This document shows positions 190-48,401 of a DNA stretch of 64,000 nucleotides, in pieces (position 1 is the stretch's first letter; the number at the start of each line of letters is the position of its first letter). The notes beneath the pieces are model-generated. The model was given only the letters and a program-made list of their open reading frames with translations, was not told the origin of the DNA and ran no database searches. A program made the position numbers and the translations under genes. Location of the stretch: the IMG/VR virus record IMGVR_UViG_3300034073_003340, positions 371,857-435,856 of that record, one strand, 5' to 3'.

Positions 190-1542
190 ATGAATCAAAA
201 TAGCTCATCAGATTATATCCTAGACACCAGTCGCGAATACTCAATTTACGTTTGCGAAAGCCGAGCAATTCCAAAAGTTGCTGACGGTCTCAAAGACGCC
301 CAACGCAAGGCGTTATGGTTGGTTCGCAATAGATCAGATAAAACAAAAACCGTTTCGCTAGCTGGTGAAATGATTTCCAGCGGCCTTTATCTACATGGTG
401 ACCAAAGTGCGGCCGGGGCTATCAGCATGTTGGCTGCTCCATATGTTAACAATGTTCCACTTTTGGAAGGTATTGGTTCGTTTGGAACCCGAGTGGCACC
501 GGTAGACGGTATCGGCGCTCCGCGTTATACCTATGTCAAACGTGGAAAAGCGGCCCAAGATCTTATGTTTATGGATCTTGATATCGTACCGGTCAAAGAA
601 AATTATGACGGTTCCACTATCGAACCCCAAAACTTCCTTCCCCTCATCCCAACAGTGCTCTTAAATGGAGTCTCAGGCATTGCTGTTGGTTGGTCTACCG
701 AGATCTTACCCAGATCCTTTAAGAGCCTCGTAGACGCCACATTGGCCATTTTAGACGGAAAAAAGATCAAGCGTATTCCACCTTCCTATGATCTCTACGA
801 CGTGGGGGTCAAACACTTGGAGGATAATTCTTGGGAGTTCACTGGTAAGTTGGAGATTGTTGATACCAGCACGATCAAAGTTACCGAACTGCCTCCAGAA
901 CTCACGTTGGAGAAATTCAAAGAACGTCTCAACACCTATGAAGACGAAAATAAGATCTCTTCATATACTGATCGTTCAACTGATACCATTGATATCACGA
1001 TCAAAATGGCTAGAGGGTCTTGTAAGGGTTGGTCTTCTACTAGAGCTATTGAATATTTCAAACTCAAGCAGAAGAAGTCAGAACGTATTGTGGTTATCGA
1101 CTGGAATGGATCCTCTATTCGTCAGTATGAAAGCGCCGAAAAGCTTGTTGAGGATTTTGTTGAATGGCGACTGGGATGGTATAAGACCCGCTATGAAAAC
1201 AAAGTGGCCAAGGACGAATATGAACTAGGATTTTGGAAGGGGGTCAAGCTTTGCTTTGATGATAAACTTCCTGCTCGACTAGGTGCTATCAAGAGTCGAT
1301 CTGAACTAGATCAGGACGTCAACAACGTTACATCAAAGCTTGCCCTTGATAACAAGCGTATTGACCGCATCGTCAATCTCCCAGCTCATCGTTGGACCAA
1401 GGATGCGTATGGTGATGTTTTGGCCAAAATCAAAGAGCTAGAAGCTAACATTAAGGAATACAAGCGTATTCTAAAGGATCCTGAGGAGCGAAAGTCCATC
1501 TACCGATCAGAAGTAGAGGCTCTAAAAAAGACCAAGTTCTAA
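190..1542 (+). CDS. Type II DNA topoisomerase, GyrA/ParC-like (T4 gp52-like) subunit
   Basis: Motifs RAIPKVADGLKDAQRK, YLHGDQS, GAPRYTY (catalytic Tyr), PLIPTVLLNGVSGIAVGWST and ITELP; 450 aa, matching the T4 gp52 size class. Confidence 0.93.
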   Translation: MNQNSSSDYILDTSREYSIYVCESRAIPKVADGLKDAQRKALWLVRNRSDKTKTVSLAGEMISSGLYLHGDQSAAGAISMLAAPYVNNVPLLEGIGSFGTRVAPVDGIGAPRYTYVKRGKAAQDLMFMDLDIVPVKENYDGSTIEPQNFLPLIPTVLLNGVSGIAVGWSTEILPRSFKSLVDATLAILDGKKIKRIPPSYDLYDVGVKHLEDNSWEFTGKLEIVDTSTIKVTELPPELTLEKFKERLNTYEDENKISSYTDRSTDTIDITIKMARGSCKGWSSTRAIEYFKLKQKKSERIVVIDWNGSSIRQYESAEKLVEDFVEWRLGWYKTRYENKVAKDEYELGFWKGVKLCFDDKLPARLGAIKSRSELDQDVNNVTSKLALDNKRIDRIVNLPAHRWTKDAYGDVLAKIKELEANIKEYKRILKDPEERKSIYRSEVEALKKTKF

Positions 1543-2841: not shown

Positions 2842-3075
2842 TTAGCTTTGAAGTTTCAAAAACATCGCATATCGCTTTTCGATCTTTTCGATCGCTTCAA
2901 GATACGGTTTGGCGGCTTCTTCCGCCGCCAATCGTTTTGCTTGATTCATTTCCAGCTTGAGATCTTGTATTTGATTCCACATATCCGTGATAGCAGAACC
3001 TTCACTAAGGATCTCCTGCTCGGTTGACTCGGATTTACCCATCAACTGTTTACGGATATCAGCAAGAATACTCAT
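2842..3075 (-). CDS. Small coiled-coil hypothetical protein
   Basis: 77 aa, helical; start overlaps the stop of the upstream gene (ATGA-type coupling). Confidence 0.7.
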   Translation of the reverse strand: MSILADIRKQLMGKSESTEQEILSEGSAITDMWNQIQDLKLEMNQAKRLAAEEAAKPYLEAIEKIEKRYAMFLKLQS

Positions 3076-3524
3076 GCGAAGTTGACCTCAAACCCACACT
3101 GGCGCAGCTCTTCTATACTATTCAGTATACTCTTTTCACGATTTAGAGGATCATCGCCTGTCGAACGTTCCAGTTCAGCTGTTTGGACTGATGTCTCTGC
3201 TTTTTCAATAGCTGCCTTTGATTCCACCAAACCCAAATTGGTCATGCTCCGCAGGACCTTTATGGCCCGGATCTTGAATCCAATGCCGGATCCACCGCTT
3301 CGATAAAGATCATCATCAACAAGGCGAAATGAAATTCGGCCAGTAACTTGATATAGATTGGATAGCTTATTGAGGATCACGCGATCCTTCCATGACTTGC
3401 CAAGTGTTCCTTCAAGCGCAGAAATCGCTTGATTAGCAGTCTCCGCCCCAAACGTAAGGTTGACCACCCGCAGAAACTGCTGACTTATTTCGTCCAGCAA
3501 TTGGGTATCCACCTTGTTTTCCAT
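3072..3524 (-). CDS. Protein with C-terminal ribosomal protein bL12 (L7/L12) CTD-like domain
   Basis: KIRAIKVLRSMTNLGLVESKAAIEKA matches the bL12 consensus KI-x-VIK-x-VR-x2-TGLGLKEAK-x2-VE; ends ELRQCGFEV like the LEEAGA-x-V end of bL12; AGGAG RBS. Confidence 0.7.
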   Translation of the reverse strand: MENKVDTQLLDEISQQFLRVVNLTFGAETANQAISALEGTLGKSWKDRVILNKLSNLYQVTGRISFRLVDDDLYRSGGSGIGFKIRAIKVLRSMTNLGLVESKAAIEKAETSVQTAELERSTGDDPLNREKSILNSIEELRQCGFEVNFA

Positions 3525-4911: not shown

Positions 4912-5451
4912 TCAGCCAATATATAAGGCTGAATTTGAACCATGTTCAAAACATTCTACCGAAACAAGACGAACGTCCGGATTGACAGCATAACGACCCA
5001 ATTCGCCAGTCTTCATCTTTTCCAGTAGTTCAGATGCTTTATCATAAACCAACTTTGCTGTTAGTTCACATCCTACACCAGGAACGATCCTGAGGTTACA
5101 TACCCTTCCTTCTTCAAAAGGCTCAGCTTCGGAGTCAGGTTCTAGGCCATCGTAAACAGAATGAATGGAAAAGCTGGCTAGCTCTTTGAACTTTTCAAGG
5201 GCCGGATCATCCTTGGCGACCAAGATAGTGTGATCAAACATATAGTCTAGGTATTCCTTAATTGGCTTCATACCGCCAAAATCAAAACACCAGTTCTTTT
5301 CATCAAGGGTCTCTGATTCAAAGACAAACTTGAAGCCCAGACTATATCCGTGAAGCGTAGAACAGTGCGAGTGATTTGCCTTCCACTGACGGAAGCAACA
5401 GGAGAGACCACGGTCGGTTCCGTAGGTCTTGGTAGATTGAAACTTTGCCAT
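4912..5451 (-). CDS. queD: 6-carboxy-5,6,7,8-tetrahydropterin synthase (QueD/PTPS family)
   Basis: SCCFRQWKANHSHCSTLHGYS (Zn-binding His and Cys), WCFDFGG, FDHT, GCELTA and VECFEH..NSA. Start placed at MAKF (5451) rather than the track start 5466. Confidence 0.88.
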   Translation of the reverse strand: MAKFQSTKTYGTDRGLSCCFRQWKANHSHCSTLHGYSLGFKFVFESETLDEKNWCFDFGGMKPIKEYLDYMFDHTILVAKDDPALEKFKELASFSIHSVYDGLEPDSEAEPFEEGRVCNLRIVPGVGCELTAKLVYDKASELLEKMKTGELGRYAVNPDVRLVSVECFEHGSNSALYIG

Positions 5452-5550
5452 TTTTATGGTTCTCATTTTCGTGACACAGAATCTTTAAAGAGGGATGAGT
5501 CGTCGTCCTCTATCATTCATTTATATAGAACTGGACAAAAATCTGCAATA

Positions 5551-7635: not shown

Positions 7636-7922
7636 GAGAACTTGGCCTCGAACTCCTGAGCTACCTCGATTCGATCCTTGGGGAAGAACACGGTTGTGAT
7701 GTCGTGCTCGTCCGACGAACGCGAGGTCATGACCTCGATACCATGGCCCTCAATGAAGGCACGAGCCTCATCGCCGATCACCCAATGAAAGGTGTCCGGC
7801 CACTTGTGATCCGTTTCCTTCTTCATATGAGCGAAGCCGACCATGCGTACGGGAATACACAGGGCCTGCTTCGCCCGTATGCGCTCAAAAGCGGACATGA
7901 TCTCGGCGTGACGGTCGGTCAT
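7632..7922 (-). CDS. Small hypothetical protein, possible divergent FKL-family member
   Basis: Coupled ORF; ends VFFPKDRIEVAQEFEAKFS. Confidence 0.65.
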   Translation of the reverse strand: MTDRHAEIMSAFERIRAKQALCIPVRMVGFAHMKKETDHKWPDTFHWVIGDEARAFIEGHGIEVMTSRSSDEHDITTVFFPKDRIEVAQEFEAKFS

Positions 7923-9055
7923 GCTTCGATCGCCAGCAGTTCTTCCTTGGTTCGCGTAAACCGACTGAATACCCAGGCATTCTCCAGCATCCGCAGCCGC
8001 TGACCCATGGCCGGGCCAGGCTTCATACCCAGTGCCAGCAGATCCTTACCCGTTACCGGGAAAGTGGGAACCTTGAACGCCTCGGCATGACGTGCCAGCG
8101 AGGGCTCGCCTGCGATCTCCAGCATGGAAACCACATGATCCAGGGGGAACTTGTCGCGAGTCAGCATAACCTCAACCCGCTCTTCGGTCCAGTTCAGACC
8201 GCGATTGCGAATCAGGTTGCGCACCTTGGCTTCTTCGGCACTGCTCATCTTCCAAAACTTGAAGAAGTTCTCTTCATCGGTGTTGGCGATCAGCGTCGAC
8301 AGAGCAGCAACCGCATCATCCGACCGAGCCAGCTCAACGGGGTTGAACCGGAAAACACCCAGCGCACGATTGACGCCGGTCTTGAACATCGCGTCAACGA
8401 TCCGAACCCGAGCCGGCATCTTGGGATCCAGCAGCTTGCTCATTTCCTGCCAAAAACGCTCCACACTGACAAGGTTCAGTTTGTCCAGAACTTCGGCATC
8501 GCTGAACAGATCCAGATCGTCCTGGCTCATCGTGCTGTCGAAACGAGCAGCAAAGCGGAAGTAGCGCAGAATACGCAGGTAATCTTCCTGGACTCGCAGT
8601 TCCGAAACACCAACAAAGCGCACAACCTTGTTCTTCAGATCCTCGCGACCACCAAAGTAGTCGTAAACCAGACCGTTGAAGTCCATGCTCATTGCGTTGA
8701 TGGTCAGGTCGCGACGCTCAGCATCAATTTCGAAGCTGCGAGTAAACTCAACCTCGGCATGTCGACCGTCAGTCTCGACATCCACGCGCAGGGTGGTGAC
8801 CTCAAATGCTTCGCCGTCCACGACCAGCGTTGCCGTGCCGTGCTGGACACCGGTGGCAATGAAACCAAACTTGTTGGTGTTAGCAATAGCTTTCATTTCG
8901 TCCGGAGTAGCATCGGTGCAGAAGTCCACATCCTTGGGGACCACACCCAGCAGAGCGTCACGGACGCAACCACCAACAAAGCGGATCTCGAAACCGGCAG
9001 AAGAAAATGCTTCTCCCAGCTTGCGCGTTTCCGGTGTCATCAGCTTGTCCAGCAC
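7919..9055 (-). CDS. cca: Class II tRNA nucleotidyltransferase (CCA-adding enzyme)
   Basis: VGGCVRD, DVDFCT (DxD), EVTTLR, GRHAEV flexible loop, DAERRDLTINAM, GGREDL and EDYLRILRYFRF; no HD domain; GAGGAG RBS with GTG start. Confidence 0.92.
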   Translation of the reverse strand: MLDKLMTPETRKLGEAFSSAGFEIRFVGGCVRDALLGVVPKDVDFCTDATPDEMKAIANTNKFGFIATGVQHGTATLVVDGEAFEVTTLRVDVETDGRHAEVEFTRSFEIDAERRDLTINAMSMDFNGLVYDYFGGREDLKNKVVRFVGVSELRVQEDYLRILRYFRFAARFDSTMSQDDLDLFSDAEVLDKLNLVSVERFWQEMSKLLDPKMPARVRIVDAMFKTGVNRALGVFRFNPVELARSDDAVAALSTLIANTDEENFFKFWKMSSAEEAKVRNLIRNRGLNWTEERVEVMLTRDKFPLDHVVSMLEIAGEPSLARHAEAFKVPTFPVTGKDLLALGMKPGPAMGQRLRMLENAWVFSRFTRTKEELLAIEA

Positions 9056-44811: not shown

Positions 44812-45837
44812 TTATTTTAAGCGTTGTCGTTGTATACCTATTGATAACCTATCTTTGGTTCTGGCGTCAATAATCGACCATATCGTATAGAGCTTACCAT
44901 AGGCTTTTACGGCGTCTGCTGCGTCTTTTATTCCTTCATCCCAACGAGGGAAGGACACATACCAGCCTTGTGCTAGAGCAGTATCAACTAACCGTCCTCC
45001 CTGATTGGTGCGATCAGGTACGACAATTTTGGTTTTACCGGTTTGATTCAACCACTGAATCTGTTCAGGTGTTATTTTATCACCTAGCATCGCGACACCA
45101 TTTACCGCGATTCCGTCAAATGGGCCTTCATTTATAAAAAGATATTCCCAATCCTCTTTGACGATATCGGTGTTGAAAATATAATGCGGTTGAACGTCAC
45201 TATAATAGCGGCGACTGCTAGATCCGTTTACAATTCTAGCTGTCCAACCCACTATTTCATTTTCCCAGTAAAACGGGATGATAACCCTCTGATTCATATG
45301 ATCAGTAGTATCTGGGGTCCAATAATAGTCATAGGAAAGTAAAATATCCTCTCCTCTGTTGGCAACGTAAGTGAGAACTTCTAGGAAATGAGGATCTTCA
45401 CAGTTCTCTTCGAGCCAGAAGCTTATGGGCTTTGCCGACTTTGGTAGATTCCTGGATTCAAAGGTAATAGAAGCAGAGGCTTGCCGGGTAAATGATTGTT
45501 CAATACCACCGCCTTCGAGCATATTCTTACGGAGAAGAGATACATCAAAGTCAAGACGTCTGATCTTCTCACTAGGCATGCCTAGCCATTCAAAATACTT
45601 TTTCCACTTTGGAGAAAATCGAGCACCGGGTGACCAGCCGGCTCGGAACCCACAGTTAAAGCAGGAAACCGAAGTCCGGCCGTCAGAGTCAAACAAGATA
45701 CCAGATCTCTTTTTGGTGTCTGCCCTCATCTGTCCGTTATGAATACAGCATGGACCATTGAATGTGGTCCAGCGACTGGGGGTCTGCTTGCCCCCAGGTA
45801 TACAGCTCATTAGAGCACTATAGATGAGGGTAGACAT
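44812..45837 (-). CDS. DNA primase (zinc finger plus TOPRIM, T4 gp61-like)
   Basis: CCIH...CFNCG zinc-binding domain, RVIIPF..VGWTARI, INEGPFD and VVPDRT..G. Confidence 0.88.
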   Translation of the reverse strand: MSTLIYSALMSCIPGGKQTPSRWTTFNGPCCIHNGQMRADTKKRSGILFDSDGRTSVSCFNCGFRAGWSPGARFSPKWKKYFEWLGMPSEKIRRLDFDVSLLRKNMLEGGGIEQSFTRQASASITFESRNLPKSAKPISFWLEENCEDPHFLEVLTYVANRGEDILLSYDYYWTPDTTDHMNQRVIIPFYWENEIVGWTARIVNGSSSRRYYSDVQPHYIFNTDIVKEDWEYLFINEGPFDGIAVNGVAMLGDKITPEQIQWLNQTGKTKIVVPDRTNQGGRLVDTALAQGWYVSFPRWDEGIKDAADAVKAYGKLYTIWSIIDARTKDRLSIGIQRQRLK

Positions 45838-47543
45838 CAGGCAAAGAGACCGTTGTTTACTATCTGCATTTTGGGCTTGTTTTCAGCAAGATGTGGTGCT
45901 TCTGCTTCTTTCTTAGCCTTTAACACATTAACGTGATCCTTTTGGTTGGCAACCTCGAACAACTGAAGATCCAAGACTCCCCTTTCCGCATTGTCACTAG
46001 CTAGATAGTTGAGAACCTTGCGATTTCTCTCAATAACAGACATTGGAGTTTCGCTGTTGAATACATCTTCAACAACCGATTTGATTTCAAGAAGTTGCTG
46101 AGGAACAGCCGCTGGGTCGCCCTTGTCATATAGATCCTGCGATTCGTAAACCCCCTCGAGGTGAACCTGGACATTATGGTTCATCAACATCGCATAGGTG
46201 ACTACGTCCCACGTTGAAGTAAACTTTGGATCCACGTTAACACAGATGTCGCCCATCTTGAGCTGCTCACCAATCTGAGTTCTAACAAACCTAGAGCCAT
46301 CAACTCCGTCTAGACGTTCATGAAACATCTCTTCCAGCACATCGAGGAATGGACGATCAGCGTCTTTTCCCTTCTTGGGTAGAGGAATCTTATTACCAGA
46401 ATCATCAAGAAGATATTTGATGCGGTCCTTTCCGGTTGAGATCATCTCATAACCAAGTTGTTCAACTCCTTCATCGTCAAGATAGGTGTTGGTTGGTAGA
46501 TAATTTCGACCGTCTAGTTTCTCACCCTGAATACTCCAGCTGTCTTTGTTCAAGTTGTAGCCAAGGAAAACTTTACCATAAGCAGCTAGAGTAAAGGGTG
46601 AGCTCACGTCATACGAGATAGTGAAATTGGGGTTAATCTGTTCACGAACTTGTCTCTGAATGGTCGTGTAGACACAACCATGTTGGAACTTACCAACACC
46701 CAAGAAGTGCATCCAGTCACGATCCTGTAGGACTCCGTCATCTCTCATATTAATGATTCGACCCAGAGACATCTCAAAGTTCTCTTTGTGATGAGACGCA
46801 AGAGACCAACCCTCAAAGGGATAGTGCTTGACATTCTCATACCATATTTTTGACTCGCTGGCGTTTCGTCCCTGAACCACATTTAAAAACTTAGTAGCAC
46901 CAGGGACCCTGTTCTTCACAAAGTAATCGTTATTGATTAGAGTCTGAAGCATACAGGCATAGAACAGACGATCGTTCTTATTGTTGATGTTTCCGCCATT
47001 TTTGATAATCAGGTCATCCAGAGCATCCTTGTTTCCTGAATCCACAATATTGGGATCTAAAGGACTTTCAAGTCGCTGTAGATGTTGGTCAATATTACCA
47101 ATCTGAATACCGCCAGTTGGGAAGTCGAGAATCATCGACCAATCGCAATTGGCTTCCATCCAGCGCATCATCCTCTCGCGAGTTTTGTCACCCTCAAACT
47201 TGATAGCACCGGTCTGAATCTGGAATCCACCCGAGTCACCTAGAACTGTTGTAGAGCCACGATCACGACCGGTGACCATATCTTTACGTTCAGTAATACC
47301 ACTGCTCTTTGCGGCCTGCCCAGCTGAATACAGAGCACTGGGCAGATAGAACAAGCTGCTATTAGGGTTGAAGAAGTTCAGTTCCTCGCGTGGAATAGGT
47401 GGCTCACGCTTGGGGTTTTCCGCATTGACATAGCGGACATACATTTCTGAAATGGCAGGAGTAAACCGCGCATAATCGCGGTATCTCTTGGAATAATCAA
47501 TTCCGGGCATTGACGGCCTCTTGTTTTGTTCGTGTTTAACCAC
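45837..47543 (-). CDS. tRNA-guanine transglycosylase-fold protein (DpdA-like base-exchange enzyme candidate)
   Basis: GDSGGFQI (catalytic Asp), MILDFP, NVVQG, MHFLGVG, SYDVSSP and MNHN; lacks the CxCxxC Zn cluster of tRNA TGTs. Confidence 0.82.
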   Translation of the reverse strand: MVKHEQNKRPSMPGIDYSKRYRDYARFTPAISEMYVRYVNAENPKREPPIPREELNFFNPNSSLFYLPSALYSAGQAAKSSGITERKDMVTGRDRGSTTVLGDSGGFQIQTGAIKFEGDKTRERMMRWMEANCDWSMILDFPTGGIQIGNIDQHLQRLESPLDPNIVDSGNKDALDDLIIKNGGNINNKNDRLFYACMLQTLINNDYFVKNRVPGATKFLNVVQGRNASESKIWYENVKHYPFEGWSLASHHKENFEMSLGRIINMRDDGVLQDRDWMHFLGVGKFQHGCVYTTIQRQVREQINPNFTISYDVSSPFTLAAYGKVFLGYNLNKDSWSIQGEKLDGRNYLPTNTYLDDEGVEQLGYEMISTGKDRIKYLLDDSGNKIPLPKKGKDADRPFLDVLEEMFHERLDGVDGSRFVRTQIGEQLKMGDICVNVDPKFTSTWDVVTYAMLMNHNVQVHLEGVYESQDLYDKGDPAAVPQQLLEIKSVVEDVFNSETPMSVIERNRKVLNYLASDNAERGVLDLQLFEVANQKDHVNVLKAKKEAEAPHLAENKPKMQIVNNGLFA

Positions 47544-47567: not shown

Positions 47568-48401
47568 TCAATTTCTAAACACCAGTTTTGTGACTTTACC
47601 TAGATCCTCTTCTAGTGGAGGTTCACCGTATGGGTTCTGATCGTTTTGATTGAAGATCTTTACTCTCCACCACATCAAATTGGCCTCAAAAGAGTATCCT
47701 TGAGTTGAGGTCTCGTGGTCAAACTCATGAGTCTGTATGGTAAACCATTCCTCTTCCGTTGGTGTTCCCTCTTCAACTGACCCTTCAATGATAAGTTCGC
47801 CAGTGAAATTATCCAGATAAGCAGCTAGCGTATGAACACCAGTATAGTCGTCAACTTGAAGAGATCCTGGAATCGCAGAAGTTGCTCTATAGGCTATACG
47901 GCCATCCACTGGCATCTGGGTGGATAAAAGAAGCTCTTCGTATGTGACTGTTTCACTTATCCTAGGTAAGAACCTAGGACCTTGGAGAAGTTCAAAGAAC
48001 CCTCTTTGGGTCTCATTGGCATCCACATACAAGAGATGAACCGCACCGTCAGGATTGGTTACCGCAACTTGATAGCTATAGGTTTGAAGAAACCAATCCG
48101 CCATGATATCTGGTTCAATTGTGAGCTTACAGATGCCTCTGGCTTCGTTTATAACCCTTAGCTCTTTTCGCCATAGTTCGCGATCTATTCTGTGGTCGTA
48201 AAAGATGATCTCAGCTGAGCGACCCATCATGTTTATGGGTTTTCGATCGGTATCTCTTACCACGAACTCGATTGTATTCTGCACGTCTCTGAAAACGCGG
48301 AAGTCATTTGTGTTCATGGGAAGATTCCAATTCACTGTGCCGCCAGTTTCTCTGAGGGTCATTTCAATCTTTCGCTTTTTATCTATTAGAAAGACTGTCA
48401 T
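47568..48401 (-). CDS. Late structural protein (BppU/baseplate-like N-terminal domain)
   Basis: VQNTIEFVVRDTDRKPINM...GICKLTI; late box upstream. Confidence 0.68.
   Translation of the reverse strand: MTVFLIDKKRKIEMTLRETGGTVNWNLPMNTNDFRVFRDVQNTIEFVVRDTDRKPINMMGRSAEIIFYDHRIDRELWRKELRVINEARGICKLTIEPDIMADWFLQTYSYQVAVTNPDGAVHLLYVDANETQRGFFELLQGPRFLPRISETVTYEELLLSTQMPVDGRIAYRATSAIPGSLQVDDYTGVHTLAAYLDNFTGELIIEGSVEEGTPTEEEWFTIQTHEFDHETSTQGYSFEANLMWWRVKIFNQNDQNPYGEPPLEEDLGKVTKLVFRN

What the first reader, a model, noticed from the sequence alone, without database searches (positions are those of the whole stretch)
45837..47543. Large TGT-fold enzyme coupled to primase and helicase: candidate 7-deazaguanine DNA modification
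The TGT catalytic motifs are present, the tRNA-TGT zinc cluster is absent, the protein is enlarged to 568 aa by insertions, and its stop overlaps the primase start. It is established that phage DpdA-type TGT paralogs insert preQ0, G+ or ADG into DNA against restriction. With QueD in the same window, DNA is the more likely substrate, possibly modified at the replication fork.
Basis: partly seen in the sequence, partly recalled or inferred. Interest (0 to 1): 0.62.

Follow-up and report, generated by a model that had tools for sequence, protein, structure and literature searches.

The report
Unnamed jumbo-phage DNA deazaguanine transglycosylase family
This gene of a 436-kb jumbo phage encodes a large, very divergent relative of the enzymes that swap guanine for 7-deazaguanine bases. 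Its relatives in hundreds of phages sit inside a 7-deazaguanine synthesis operon, so it is very probably the so far unnamed enzyme that puts this protective base into the DNA of PA5oct-like jumbo phages.

Summary
The gene lies on the minus strand. It most likely starts at ATG 47510 (557 aa, not 568), and its TGA overlaps the primase ATG as TGATG.

No Pfam, PHROG, NCBIfam or PADLOC model recognises the protein. A confident AlphaFold model nevertheless matches only TGT-superfamily structures above the generic TIM-barrel background (ArcTGT Z 20, QTRT2 18, Tgt 17, DpdA 16). The three Asp residues I map by motif to the TGT/DpdA catalytic triad are 98-100% conserved in 241 relatives. The CxCxxC zinc motif is absent.

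Context gives the function. At least 595 IMG/VR loci encode relatives. In 41 of 44 loci with enough flank, the gene heads a co-oriented module: TGT-like, DpdL, GT4 glycosyltransferase, FolE, phosphoribosyltransferase, QueE. The three exceptions are this phage's own clade, where the gene has moved next to primase and DnaB and the module stays 300 kb away.

The genome has FolE, QueD, QueE and DpdL but no QueC. The predicted base is therefore 7-deazaguanine (or CDG), not preQ0, G+ or ADG.

PA5oct carries a homologue annotated as hypothetical, and its DNA is reported to be restriction-resistant at G.

Comparative data do not support coupling to the replication fork. I file it as a new variant (subfamily) of the DpdA kind.

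The parts
45837..47510 (-). Gene for the TGT-fold, DpdA-like transglycosylase, 557 aa (P0002). Putative triad (P0002 numbering): D92 in GDSGGFQ (general acid/base), D129 in LDFP (base recognition), D301 in SYDVSSP (nucleophile).
   Evidence: ORF. Start ATG 47510 with AAGAGG RBS. AF2 pLDDT 88.6. TGT-superfamily fold: Z 20.1, 17.9, 17.2, 15.9, 14.0 against <=11.9 for other TIM barrels; Foldseek top 50 all Tgt. Motif conservation 98-100%. hhalign to Tgt.
47511..47543 (-). Probably untranslated leader that holds the RBS.
   Evidence: Homologues and the database entry start at the ATG. RBS AAGAGG at 47517-47522.
44812..45837 (-). DnaG/TOPRIM-type primase, 341 aa. Its start overlaps the transglycosylase stop (TGATG).
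   Evidence: phrog_47 E 1.9e-22; TIGR01391 weak; overlap read; same order in phage Phosso.
43290..44792 (-). DnaB-like replicative helicase, 500 aa.
   Evidence: PF03796 E 3.7e-16; phrog_19 E 5e-70.
47568..48401 (-). Conserved upstream gene, 277 aa (PHROG label 'virion structural protein'). Syntenic with Phosso gene 439.
   Evidence: phrog_14467 E 8e-23; 32% identical to Phosso 439 and unrelated to the clamp-like protein found upstream in PA5oct-type phages.
4912..5466 (-). QueD (6-carboxytetrahydropterin synthase, phage type with CxxxHGY), 184 aa. It is the only deazaguanine-pathway gene inside the window besides the transglycosylase.
   Evidence: PF01242 48 bits. 53-56% identical to QueD of immuto and Motura. 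Neighbours are unrelated: topoisomerase IV-A, Smr, CCA-adding enzyme, HNH.

Best explanation
The gene encodes a DNA guanine transglycosylase of the TGT/DpdA superfamily. It belongs to a large subfamily, so far unnamed, that is typical of PA5oct-like and related jumbo phages.

Proposed pathway:
- The phage makes a 7-deazaguanine base from GTP: FolE gives H2NTP, QueD gives CPH4, QueE gives CDG, and DpdL gives 7-deazaguanine.
- There is no QueC, so the route cannot reach preQ0.
- The transglycosylase flips a guanine out of double-stranded phage DNA.
- D301 attacks C1' and displaces guanine, forming a covalent enzyme-DNA intermediate. D92 acts as general acid/base.
- The deazaguanine base (DG, or CDG) then resolves the intermediate. 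G is thereby replaced after replication, and the DNA is protected from restriction enzymes that read G.
- The neighbouring phosphoribosyltransferase most simply recycles the released guanine into GMP/GTP.

Status of each step:
- Shown here: the fold, motif conservation, presence of the pathway genes, and operon linkage across phages.
- Inferred: DNA as substrate, DG or CDG as the base, the double-displacement chemistry (by analogy with Tgt and bacterial DpdA), and the salvage role of the phosphoribosyltransferase.
- Open: the role of the conserved GT4 glycosyltransferase.

In this phage and in Phosso the gene has been moved out of the operon to sit just ahead of primase and helicase. This most simply means co-expression with replication genes.
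For: Fold:
- VIA-align over 48,161 PDB representatives ranks ArcTGT 1iq8 (Z 20.1), QTRT2 (17.9), Tgt (17.2), the DNA preQ0 insertase DpdA 7ui4 (15.9) and Cap10 (14.0) first. Generic TIM barrels follow at Z<=11.9.
- The Foldseek PDB top 50 are all Tgt.
- BFVD hits after the family's own members are phage TGT/DpdA proteins: Motura, nt-1, mycobacteriophage DpdAs and a 259-aa phiST protein.

Active site:
- D92, D129 and D301 are 98%, 100% and 100% conserved in 241 relatives.
- D92 and D301 align to Tgt's DSGGfQ and FDC motifs. D129 is assigned by eye to the DEC motif.
- The three Asp are invariant and essential in Tgt and bDpdA (PMC10164549).

Pathway genes in the own genome:
- FolE, 156 bits.
- QueD.
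- QueE, 42-50% identical to the QueE of phages with proven dPreQ1 DNA.
- DpdL with the exact signature LxxxHRHxF, 59% identical to ACP17 and 34% to the phiST, phi13:1 and phi19:2 proteins. The Cellulophaga phages carry dDG (PMC10516641).
- No QueC.

Linkage:
- Of 44 IMG/VR loci with >=9 kb downstream, 41 have DpdL, FolE or QueE within 10 kb on the same strand (DpdL 40, FolE 35, QueE 31).
- 25 of 36 fragments carry FolE.
- In Vibrio phage 2.275.O the homologue heads a QueF-YhhQ-QueC-GATase-FolE-QueE cluster.
- In PA5oct it lies 4 kb from QueE.

No other TGT/DpdA homologue was detected in the genome.

[quoted passage not shown] The authors named QueE and PTPS but no transglycosylase (PMC12191111).
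Against: - No biochemical or mass-spectrometry data exist for this phage or, in the text I could read, for PA5oct.
- Sequence similarity to any characterised TGT or DpdA is only at the profile-profile margin: hhalign E 1e-3 to Tgt (probability 21%), 6.9e-5 to Motura TGT (63%), 1.2e-3 to DpdA3 (19%).
- The placement of the three Asp in the pocket could not be checked in 3D because no coordinates were available. The hhalign alignment does not pair D129 with Tgt's DEC motif.
- The Zn site that bDpdA retains is missing.
- The phage encodes 59 tRNAs, including all four GUN families (Asp, Asn, His, Tyr) that Tgt modifies. A tRNA substrate therefore exists.
- A conserved phosphoribosyltransferase between FolE and QueE (26 of those 44 loci; also present in phage immuto) could instead feed a nucleotide-level, pre-replicative route.
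- DpdL activity itself has never been shown (PMC10516641).
Confidence: 0.74

Rival explanations
1. The enzyme modifies tRNA, not DNA. It would insert the phage-made deazaguanine at G34 (or another position) of the phage's own Asp, Asn, His and Tyr tRNAs to tune translation late in infection.
For: - The genome encodes 59 tRNAs, including two each of Asp-GUC, His-GUG and Asn-GUU and one Tyr-GUA.
- The best structural matches are tRNA enzymes: ArcTGT, QTRT2 and Tgt.
- The window also holds a CCA-adding enzyme.
Against: - The pathway lacks QueC and QueF. It therefore cannot make preQ1 or preQ0, the tRNA substrates; it ends at CDG or DG via DpdL.
- The Zn subdomain motif of tRNA TGTs is missing.
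- PA5oct, which carries a homologue, has restriction-resistant DNA (PMC12191111).
- Every phage studied so far with these synthesis genes modifies DNA (PMC10516641).
- All 5 bacterial genomes tested that hold a family member also have a canonical Tgt.
Confidence: 0.07
2. The deazaguanine enters DNA before replication. The conserved phosphoribosyltransferase would turn DG or CDG into a nucleotide (like ToyH in toyocamycin synthesis), and the phage polymerase would incorporate the dNTP. The TGT-like enzyme would then only mop up residual G or repair the DNA, or would act on the free nucleotide pool.
For: - The phosphoribosyltransferase (PF00156, 69 bits; XGPRT/HGPRT-like) sits between FolE and QueE in this genome and in 26 of 44 loci with enough flank.
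- The same placement occurs in phage immuto, whose G is 100% replaced (PMC10516641).
- The module sits next to PolB, a clamp-like protein, TMP kinase and FEN.
- ADG nucleoside was seen in the cytoplasm of cells infected with CP220 (cited in PMC10516641).
Against: - A transglycosylase with an intact triad heads the module in 41 of 44 loci. That is hard to explain if it were dispensable.
- The field's current view is that all known cases are post-replicative (PMC10516641).
- Guanine salvage explains the phosphoribosyltransferase equally well.
- No dedicated kinase or reductase for a deaza-nucleotide was identified.
Confidence: 0.1
3. One reading: the enzyme is physically coupled to primase and helicase and modifies DNA at the replication fork.
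For: - The stop-start overlap TGATG with primase, followed by DnaB, suggests translational coupling.
- The same order occurs in Phosso and in 3 IMG/VR loci.
- In the other clade the gene follows PolB and a clamp-like protein, so it always sits among replication genes.
Against: - Primase adjacency is limited to one clade: 3 of 80 loci plus Phosso.
- The downstream gene is an unrelated GT-like protein in PA5oct and another unrelated gene in Vibrio phage 2.275.O.
- Gene overlap shows co-expression, not binding. No interaction was tested.
Confidence: 0.08
4. The protein is a TGT-fold DNA glycosylase or a non-exchanging binder, for example an anti-defence factor that shields or excises bases, rather than a base-exchange enzyme.
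For: - Distant relatives sit in bacterial islands next to Mrr, CBASS and small recombinases, without deazaguanine genes nearby.
- Cap10, a TGT-fold protein of CBASS, is among the structural matches.
Against: - The full Asp triad and the Q/G pocket motifs of exchanging TGTs are conserved.
- In phages the gene is embedded in a base-synthesis operon.
Confidence: 0.04

Closest known systems
Phage DpdA subfamilies DpdA1-DpdA4, especially DpdA3 of Cellulophaga phage phiST, Flavobacterium phage immuto and Campylobacter phage CP220 (Cui et al. 2023, PMC10516641)
   Same: - TGT-superfamily fold.
- Encoded with FolE, QueD and QueE. As in phiST and ACP17, DpdL is present and QueC is absent.
- A phosphoribosyltransferase sits beside FolE, as in immuto.
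- The motifs VVQG, HxLGxG and SxDxSxP align with DpdA3.
- Invisible to Pfam PF01702, as this family is.
   Different: - No BLAST-level similarity to the two relatives tested, immuto DpdA3 and Motura TGT; hhalign probability to DpdA3 is only 19%.
- About twice the size of DpdA3 (557 vs 264 aa), with two large insertions and a helical C-terminal domain.
- Usually partnered with a GT4 glycosyltransferase.
- Typical of jumbo phages and placed within the replication module.
Bacterial DpdA of the Dpd system (Salmonella Montevideo, PDB 7UI4; PMC10164549)
   Same: - TIM-barrel transglycosylase acting on dsDNA; structural match Z 15.9 over 324 residues.
- The three Asp have near-identical numbering: D95, D130, D256 against D92, D129, D301.
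- A Phe lies four residues after the first Asp (F99 against F96).
   Different: - bDpdA keeps the structural Zn site and needs the ATPase DpdB.
- Here the CxCxxC motif is absent and no PADLOC defence model, Dpd or other, matched the protein; DpdB/DpdC were not searched for.
- bDpdA inserts preQ0, which this phage cannot make.
tRNA-guanine transglycosylases (bacterial Tgt, archaeal ArcTGT, eukaryotic QTRT1/2)
   Same: - Best structural matches: Z 17-20, Foldseek E about 1e-7.
- Shared motifs DSGGfQ, ivQG, lMGVG, FDC and HN.
   Different: - About 10-12% identity and no HMM hit.
- No Zn cluster.
- The pocket loop GGLAVGE appears to be replaced by LAxHKENF (read by eye).
- Phage-encoded, inside a DNA-modification module.
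'tRNA guanine transglycosylase' of Achromobacter phage Motura and relatives (jumbo phages of about 200-260 kb)
   Same: - Another Pfam-invisible, enlarged (473 aa) TGT-like protein of jumbo phages, inside a QueD-QueC-QueE-FolE cluster.
- Nearly identical first motif, DSGGFQIrqG.
- Foldseek E 1.7e-10.
   Different: - A separate family at BLAST level.
- Motura has QueC (preQ0 route), no DpdL hit and no annotated GT4 in the module.

Membership tests
TGT/DpdA superfamily (TIM-barrel base-exchange transglycosylases) | (beta/alpha)8 TGT fold | tested here: met
   AF2 pLDDT 88.6, pTM 0.85. The top five PDB representatives are all TGT-superfamily (Z 20.1-14.0), against <=11.9 for other barrels. Foldseek top 50 are all Tgt.
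TGT/DpdA superfamily (TIM-barrel base-exchange transglycosylases) | Three invariant Asp: general acid/base in DSGGxQ, base-recognition Asp, nucleophile Asp | tested here: met
   D92 98%, D129 100% and D301 100% conserved over 241 relatives. D92 and D301 align to the Tgt motifs in hhalign; D129 is assigned by eye. Placement in 3D was not verified.
TGT/DpdA superfamily (TIM-barrel base-exchange transglycosylases) | Match to the curated family model (Pfam PF01702) | tested here: not met
   No hit even at E<=10. Control: the annotated DpdA of phage immuto (a DpdA3-carrying phage per PMC10516641) and Motura TGT also give no hit, so the model is blind to divergent phage members.
tRNA-guanine transglycosylase (Tgt/ArcTGT) | Structural Zn site CxCxxC...H | tested here: not met
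   No CxCxxC. Only C423 (72%) and H445 (93%) remain at the aligned places.
tRNA-guanine transglycosylase (Tgt/ArcTGT) | Substrate base preQ1 or preQ0 available (needs QueC, with or without QueF) | tested here: not met
   The only QueC-model hit in the genome is NadE. No QueF or QueC by tblastn.
Phage DpdA (DNA 7-deazaguanine transglycosylase) | Encoded together with 7-deazaguanine base synthesis genes | tested here: met
   The own genome has FolE, QueD, QueE and DpdL. 41 of 44 related loci have them within 10 kb. Vibrio phage 2.275.O has the full cluster.
Phage DpdA (DNA 7-deazaguanine transglycosylase) | Sequence membership in a named subfamily (DpdA1-4) | tested here: not met
   Only DpdA3 and the Motura TGT were compared by sequence. 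No BLAST hit to immuto DpdA3 or Motura TGT; hhalign probabilities 19% and 63%. Other phage DpdA-type proteins were compared only through structure.
Phage DpdA (DNA 7-deazaguanine transglycosylase) | Deazaguanine nucleoside in virion DNA that depends on the gene; guanine exchange on dsDNA | not testable with these tools
   Indirect only: the DNA of PA5oct, which carries a homologue, resists G-reading restriction enzymes (PMC12191111).
Bacterial Dpd system DpdA | Partner ATPase DpdB (and DpdC) and a retained Zn site | tested here: not met
   The protein matches no PADLOC model and the Zn motif is absent. DpdB and DpdC were not searched for in the genome.

The most novel reading that the evidence does not exclude
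The family does more than copy DpdA. It is almost always partnered with a GT4 glycosyltransferase: adjacent in 40 of 44 phage loci, and fused to a GT4 domain in some bacterial proteins. The end product in PA5oct-like jumbo phages could therefore be a 7-deazaguanine that is further glycosylated or otherwise elaborated. That DNA hypermodification has not been described.

A bacterial branch of the family comes with an unknown partner of about 530 aa and a small tyrosine recombinase. It could be a new Dpd-like self-marking or defence system.
Probability: 0.2. Interest if true: 0.82.

Novelty: new variant of a known kind. Interest (0 to 1): 0.62.

Why it matters
Cui et al. 2023 state that every virus with 7-deazaguanine DNA encodes a DpdA. 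For PA5oct-like jumbo phages, a 2025 preprint inferred modified G but named only QueE and PTPS. This family is the missing candidate.

It is large: at least 595 IMG/VR loci, and 1106 clusters at 50% identity. All four protein-family HMM libraries searched here (Pfam, PHROGs, NCBIfam, PADLOC) miss it, so surveys that rely on such models will undercount deazaguanine-modified phages.

The gene set FolE-QueD-QueE-DpdL without QueC gives a concrete, testable prediction (dDG or dCDG) in cultured phages: Phosso on Sinorhizobium and PA5oct on Pseudomonas. PA5oct is of therapeutic interest, so knowing its DNA chemistry bears on which host defences (restriction enzymes, END and Dag nucleases) it escapes or triggers.

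The recurrent GT4 and phosphoribosyltransferase partners raise open questions. Is there further elaboration of the base? Is replacement post- or pre-replicative?

Tried and rejected
Searches that found nothing:
- Pfam (to E 10), PHROGs, NCBIfam and PADLOC on the protein.
- PDB sequence search with the single protein and with the family profile: only chance hits.
- PF01702 over the whole genome: nothing.

Other steps that led nowhere:
- My first hhalign against Tgt failed because I had picked wrong-frame ORFs from GC-rich loci. It was redone correctly.
- The HMMER profile search of 1.84 billion representatives lists only its best 150 hits, all clear family members (E<=3e-61). Whether the weak tail bridges to canonical TGT could not be seen.
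- Complex prediction of the GT4 protein with the transglycosylase gave no verdict: runs 0.00, 0.63, 0.00. It counts neither for nor against binding.
- The supplements of Iyer 2021 and Cui 2023 are not held. I could not check whether either lists the PA5oct homologue.

Ideas considered and rejected:
- QueC is present. The hit is NadE.
- The gene downstream of the homologue is a primase in all phages. It is not.
- The upstream 277-aa protein is the clamp-like protein of the PA5oct-type module. It is not.
- FolE + PTPS + GT4 make a pterin glycoside (a BH4 glucosyltransferase is among the GT4 matches, Z 23.7). This is unlikely, given QueE and DpdL in the same module.

Not used: the look-up of sequencing runs and read laying, because assembled reads cannot show base modification. 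No alternative genetic code was applied.
Full report
**1. What is there**

The window is the last 64 kb of a 435,856-bp IMG/VR virus record with direct terminal repeats, that is, a jumbo phage.

The ORF at 45837..47543 lies on the minus strand. The 568-aa reading starts at a GTG. Eleven codons further in lies an ATG (47510) preceded by AAGAGG at the usual distance. The database copy of the protein (P0002, 557 aa) and all aligned homologues start there.

The stop TGA shares one base with the ATG of the next gene (TGATG). That gene is a DnaG-type primase (phrog_47) and is followed by a DnaB-like helicase.

The ORF is a real gene. There are more than 3353 homologues in the 90% collection and 1106 clusters at 50% identity with E<=1e-3. 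At least 595 loci occur in IMG/VR and 106 in representative prokaryote genomes.

**2. Is it a TGT-fold enzyme?**

No profile library recognises it: Pfam even at E 10, PHROGs, NCBIfam and PADLOC. HMMER against PDB sequences also fails. This is uninformative. The annotated DpdA of phage immuto (a DpdA3-carrying phage) and the annotated TGT of phage Motura are just as invisible to Pfam.

An AlphaFold2 model built on 44 homologues is confident (pLDDT 88.6, pTM 0.85).
- Against 48,161 PDB representatives the five best matches are archaeosine TGT (Z 20.1), QTRT2 (17.9), bacterial Tgt (17.2), the DNA preQ0 insertase DpdA (15.9) and CBASS Cap10 (14.0). Unrelated TIM barrels start at Z 11.9.
- The Foldseek PDB top 50 are all Z. 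mobilis Tgt.
- In BFVD the best matches after the family's own members are phage TGT/DpdA proteins.

Over 241 diverse relatives, conservation is as follows:
- D92-S-G-G-x-Q97: 97-98%
- D129 and P131: 100%
- Q213 and G214: 95-97%
- G234: 92%
- H268: 100%; G271: 99%
- D301: 100%
- H445 and N446: 93-95%

A 315-column hhalign against five bacterial Tgt proteins pairs these with DSGGfQ, ivQG, GyAvGG, lMGVG, FDCVlP and HN. The score is weak (E 1e-3, probability 21%). That alignment does not pair D129 with Tgt's DEC motif. I assign D129 to it by eye, from the motif DWSMILDF against sDIqMqLDE and its position at the end of a strand.

In Tgt and in bacterial DpdA the three Asp are the general acid/base, the base-recognition residue and the nucleophile. 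The first and third were shown to be essential (PMC10164549).

The Tgt zinc motif CxCxxC is absent. One Cys (72%) and the His remain. Bacterial DpdA keeps the Zn site (PMC10164549), so its loss does not by itself point to DNA.

The extra length comes from helices at about 130-200, a beta-rich insert at about 313-385 and a helical C-terminal domain.

**3. What it does: evidence from context**

*Own genome.* The pathway genes found are:
- FolE at C1:118.7-119.4 kb.
- A QueE of the KVP40/phi-Grn1 type directly beside it.
- An XGPRT-like phosphoribosyltransferase between the two.
- QueD inside the window at 4912..5466.
- A 123-aa protein at C1:121,869-122,240. It carries the exact DpdL signature LxxxHRHxF (FLGHPHRHIF). 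It is 59% identical to the ACP17 protein and 34% to those of Cellulophaga phages phiST, phi13:1 and phi19:2. Cui et al. defined DpdL, the proposed CDG decarboxylase, in phiST and ACP17, and found dDG in the three Cellulophaga phages (PMC10516641).

The only hit to the QueC model is an NAD synthase. The pathway therefore ends at CDG or 7-deazaguanine.

*Related phages.* Eighty IMG/VR loci were fetched with 10-kb flanks. Clustering of their ORFs gives a conserved, co-oriented order:
- PolB
- a clamp-like 245-aa protein
- the TGT-like gene
- a 177-aa protein
- DpdL
- a GT4 glycosyltransferase (fold confirmed, Z up to 27)
- FolE
- the phosphoribosyltransferase
- QueE

Of the 44 loci with at least 9 kb downstream, 41 carry DpdL, FolE or QueE within 10 kb. 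The counts are DpdL 40, GT4 40, FolE 35, QueE 31 and phosphoribosyltransferase 26. FolE is present on 25 of 36 fragments of 30 kb or more.

In Vibrio phage 2.275.O a distant homologue heads a cluster of QueF, a YhhQ-type transporter, QueC, a GATase, FolE and QueE. In PA5oct the homologue (EST35_0316, annotated 'hypothetical') is followed by the GT-like gene, DpdL (EST35_0318) and QueE.

*The three exceptions.* These are exactly the loci of this phage's own clade, where primase and DnaB follow instead. In this genome and in Phosso the rest of the module is intact elsewhere, in the order PolB, clamp-like protein, an Ogg-like HhH glycosylase, DpdL, GT4, FolE and QueE. The transglycosylase gene has therefore been relocated. 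The primase link is derived and clade-specific. The genes downstream of the homologues in PA5oct and Vibrio phage 2.275.O are unrelated to primase.

**4. DNA or tRNA?**

For DNA:
[quoted passage not shown] The phage is targeted by nucleases specific for modified G. The authors inferred a modified G and named QueE and PTPS, but no transglycosylase (PMC12191111).
- No other TGT/DpdA homologue was detected in this genome.
- The bases that tRNA enzymes use cannot be made here.
- Cui et al. 2023 report that every virus known to carry 7-deazaguanine-modified DNA encodes a DpdA (PMC10516641).

For tRNA:
- The phage encodes 59 tRNAs, including all four GUN families.

I put DNA at roughly ten to one.

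**5. Mechanism proposed**

By analogy with Tgt and bDpdA, the enzyme would work by double displacement. D301 would be the nucleophile and D92 the acid/base. D129 and Q213 would read the Watson-Crick edge.

The incoming base would be 7-deazaguanine, or CDG if DpdL acts later. Where Tgt has the GGLAVGE loop that reads the 7-substituent, this family appears to have LAxHKENF (read by eye). That would fit a different base, but it is inference only.

The phosphoribosyltransferase most simply recycles the released guanine. The alternative, a ToyH-like nucleotide route, is kept as a rival.

The role of the GT4 enzyme is unexplained. 7-Deazaguanine offers no obvious acceptor, yet the partnership is very conserved. 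It recurs as N-terminal GT4 fusions in bacterial relatives (P0148 and P0153). A complex prediction gave no verdict.

**6. Comparison and novelty**

The protein works like a DpdA. It does not belong by sequence to the two relatives tested directly, DpdA3 and the Motura TGT, nor to the Motura-type group as a family.

Iyer et al. 2021 wrote that PA5oct has a 'deazaguanine synthesis/incorporation system' (PMC7824862). They may have seen the homologue, but their supplement is not held. No paper in the library names the family. There were no hits for DpdA5 or DpdA6, and the PA5oct gene remains 'hypothetical'.

I rate it a new variant (subfamily) of a known kind.

**7. Limits**

- There is no biochemistry.
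- The 3D position of the triad was not inspected.
- Similarity to characterised enzymes is structural plus marginal profile signal.
- DpdL's activity is itself only proposed.

Noticed in passing
Own genome C1:120,720-121,862 (-) (L096:10720-11862:-); 63 of 80 related loci, e.g. L054:9955-11055: A GT-B/GT4 glycosyltransferase (AF2 pLDDT 88.7). Matches include sucrose-phosphate synthase (Z 27), BH4 glucosyltransferase (Z 23.7) and T4 alpha-glucosyltransferase (Z 20.4). It is the most constant partner of the TGT-like gene, lying between DpdL and FolE. Its substrate is unknown.
   Followed up: partly
Proteins P0148 (865 aa) and P0153 (844 aa); locus L012:3175-5772: In some bacterial contigs an N-terminal GT4 domain is fused to the TGT-like domain. 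In L012 the gene lies next to an Mrr-type nuclease, a small integrase and a CBASS operon (Cap8, HORMA, SMODS).
   Followed up: partly
L013:7761-11407, L015:8232-11881, and 39-41 of the 80 loci L097-L176: A bacterial branch of the family, mostly in Alphaproteobacteria (Sphingomonadales, Rhizobiales, Rhodobacterales). The proteins are 416-470 aa. Each sits beside an unannotated protein of about 530 aa (two partners are homologous, E 2e-12) and a 189-aa tyrosine recombinase. Deazaguanine genes are mostly absent within 6 kb (FolE in 6 of the 80 loci). No Pfam or PADLOC hit was found. It may be an undescribed Dpd-like or phase-variable system.
   Followed up: partly
Own genome C1:123,334-123,906 (-) (L096:13334-13906:-); Phosso L182:6816-7349: An Ogg-type HhH DNA glycosylase homologue (PF22175) sits in this phage and in Phosso exactly where the TGT-like gene sits in PA5oct-type phages, between the clamp-like protein and DpdL. 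It may be a glycosylase acting on G, or a decoy for the Ogg/EndoIII-like sensors of END nucleases.
   Followed up: no
Own genome C1:118,119-118,667 (-) (L004:912-1460:-); immuto L010:10921-11316: An XGPRT/HGPRT-like phosphoribosyltransferase lies between FolE and QueE here and in 30 of 80 related loci. Phage immuto, whose G is fully replaced, has one in the same place. It may salvage guanine or provide a ToyH-like nucleotide route.
   Followed up: partly
Own genome C1:99,130-99,204 and 293,258-293,333: ARAGORN calls two tRNAs with anticodon CUA (amber suppressors, labelled 'Pyl') among 59 tRNAs, most of them in one array at 304-326 kb. This may hint at TAG read-through in part of the genome. 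The genes studied here read cleanly in code 11, and no other code was applied.
   Followed up: no
Own genome C1:124,127-125,518 (-) (L096:14127-15518:-): A 463-aa class-I aminoacyl-tRNA synthetase homologue (PF00133, E 1.5e-94, plus an anticodon-binding domain) is inserted between the clamp-like gene and the Ogg-like gene of the module.
   Followed up: no
Own genome C1:28,740-29,735 (L002:1309-2304:+) and C1:57,298-58,176 (L005:1141-2019:-): A NadE-type NAD synthase, which explains the spurious QueC hit, and an RlmN/Cfr-like radical-SAM RNA methyltransferase homologue.
   Followed up: no
PA5oct record MK797984.1, 168,575-171,944: PA5oct carries FolE and two PTPS-family genes side by side, about 55 kb from its TGT-like/DpdL/QueE cluster. 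Together with DpdL (EST35_0318) that makes three T-fold genes.
   Followed up: no
Window 190-1542 (+), 7919-9055 (-), 3072-3524 (-): The window also encodes a topoisomerase IV/gyrase A-like subunit, a CCA-adding enzyme/poly(A) polymerase-family protein and a protein with a ribosomal L7/L12 C-terminal domain.
   Followed up: no
L009:12953-13582 (Vibrio phage 2.275.O): This phage's deazaguanine cluster includes a YhhQ-type (PF02592) queuosine-precursor transporter and QueF. Its version of the family probably handles preQ1 or preQ0 rather than DG, so substrate shifts occur within the family.
   Followed up: no
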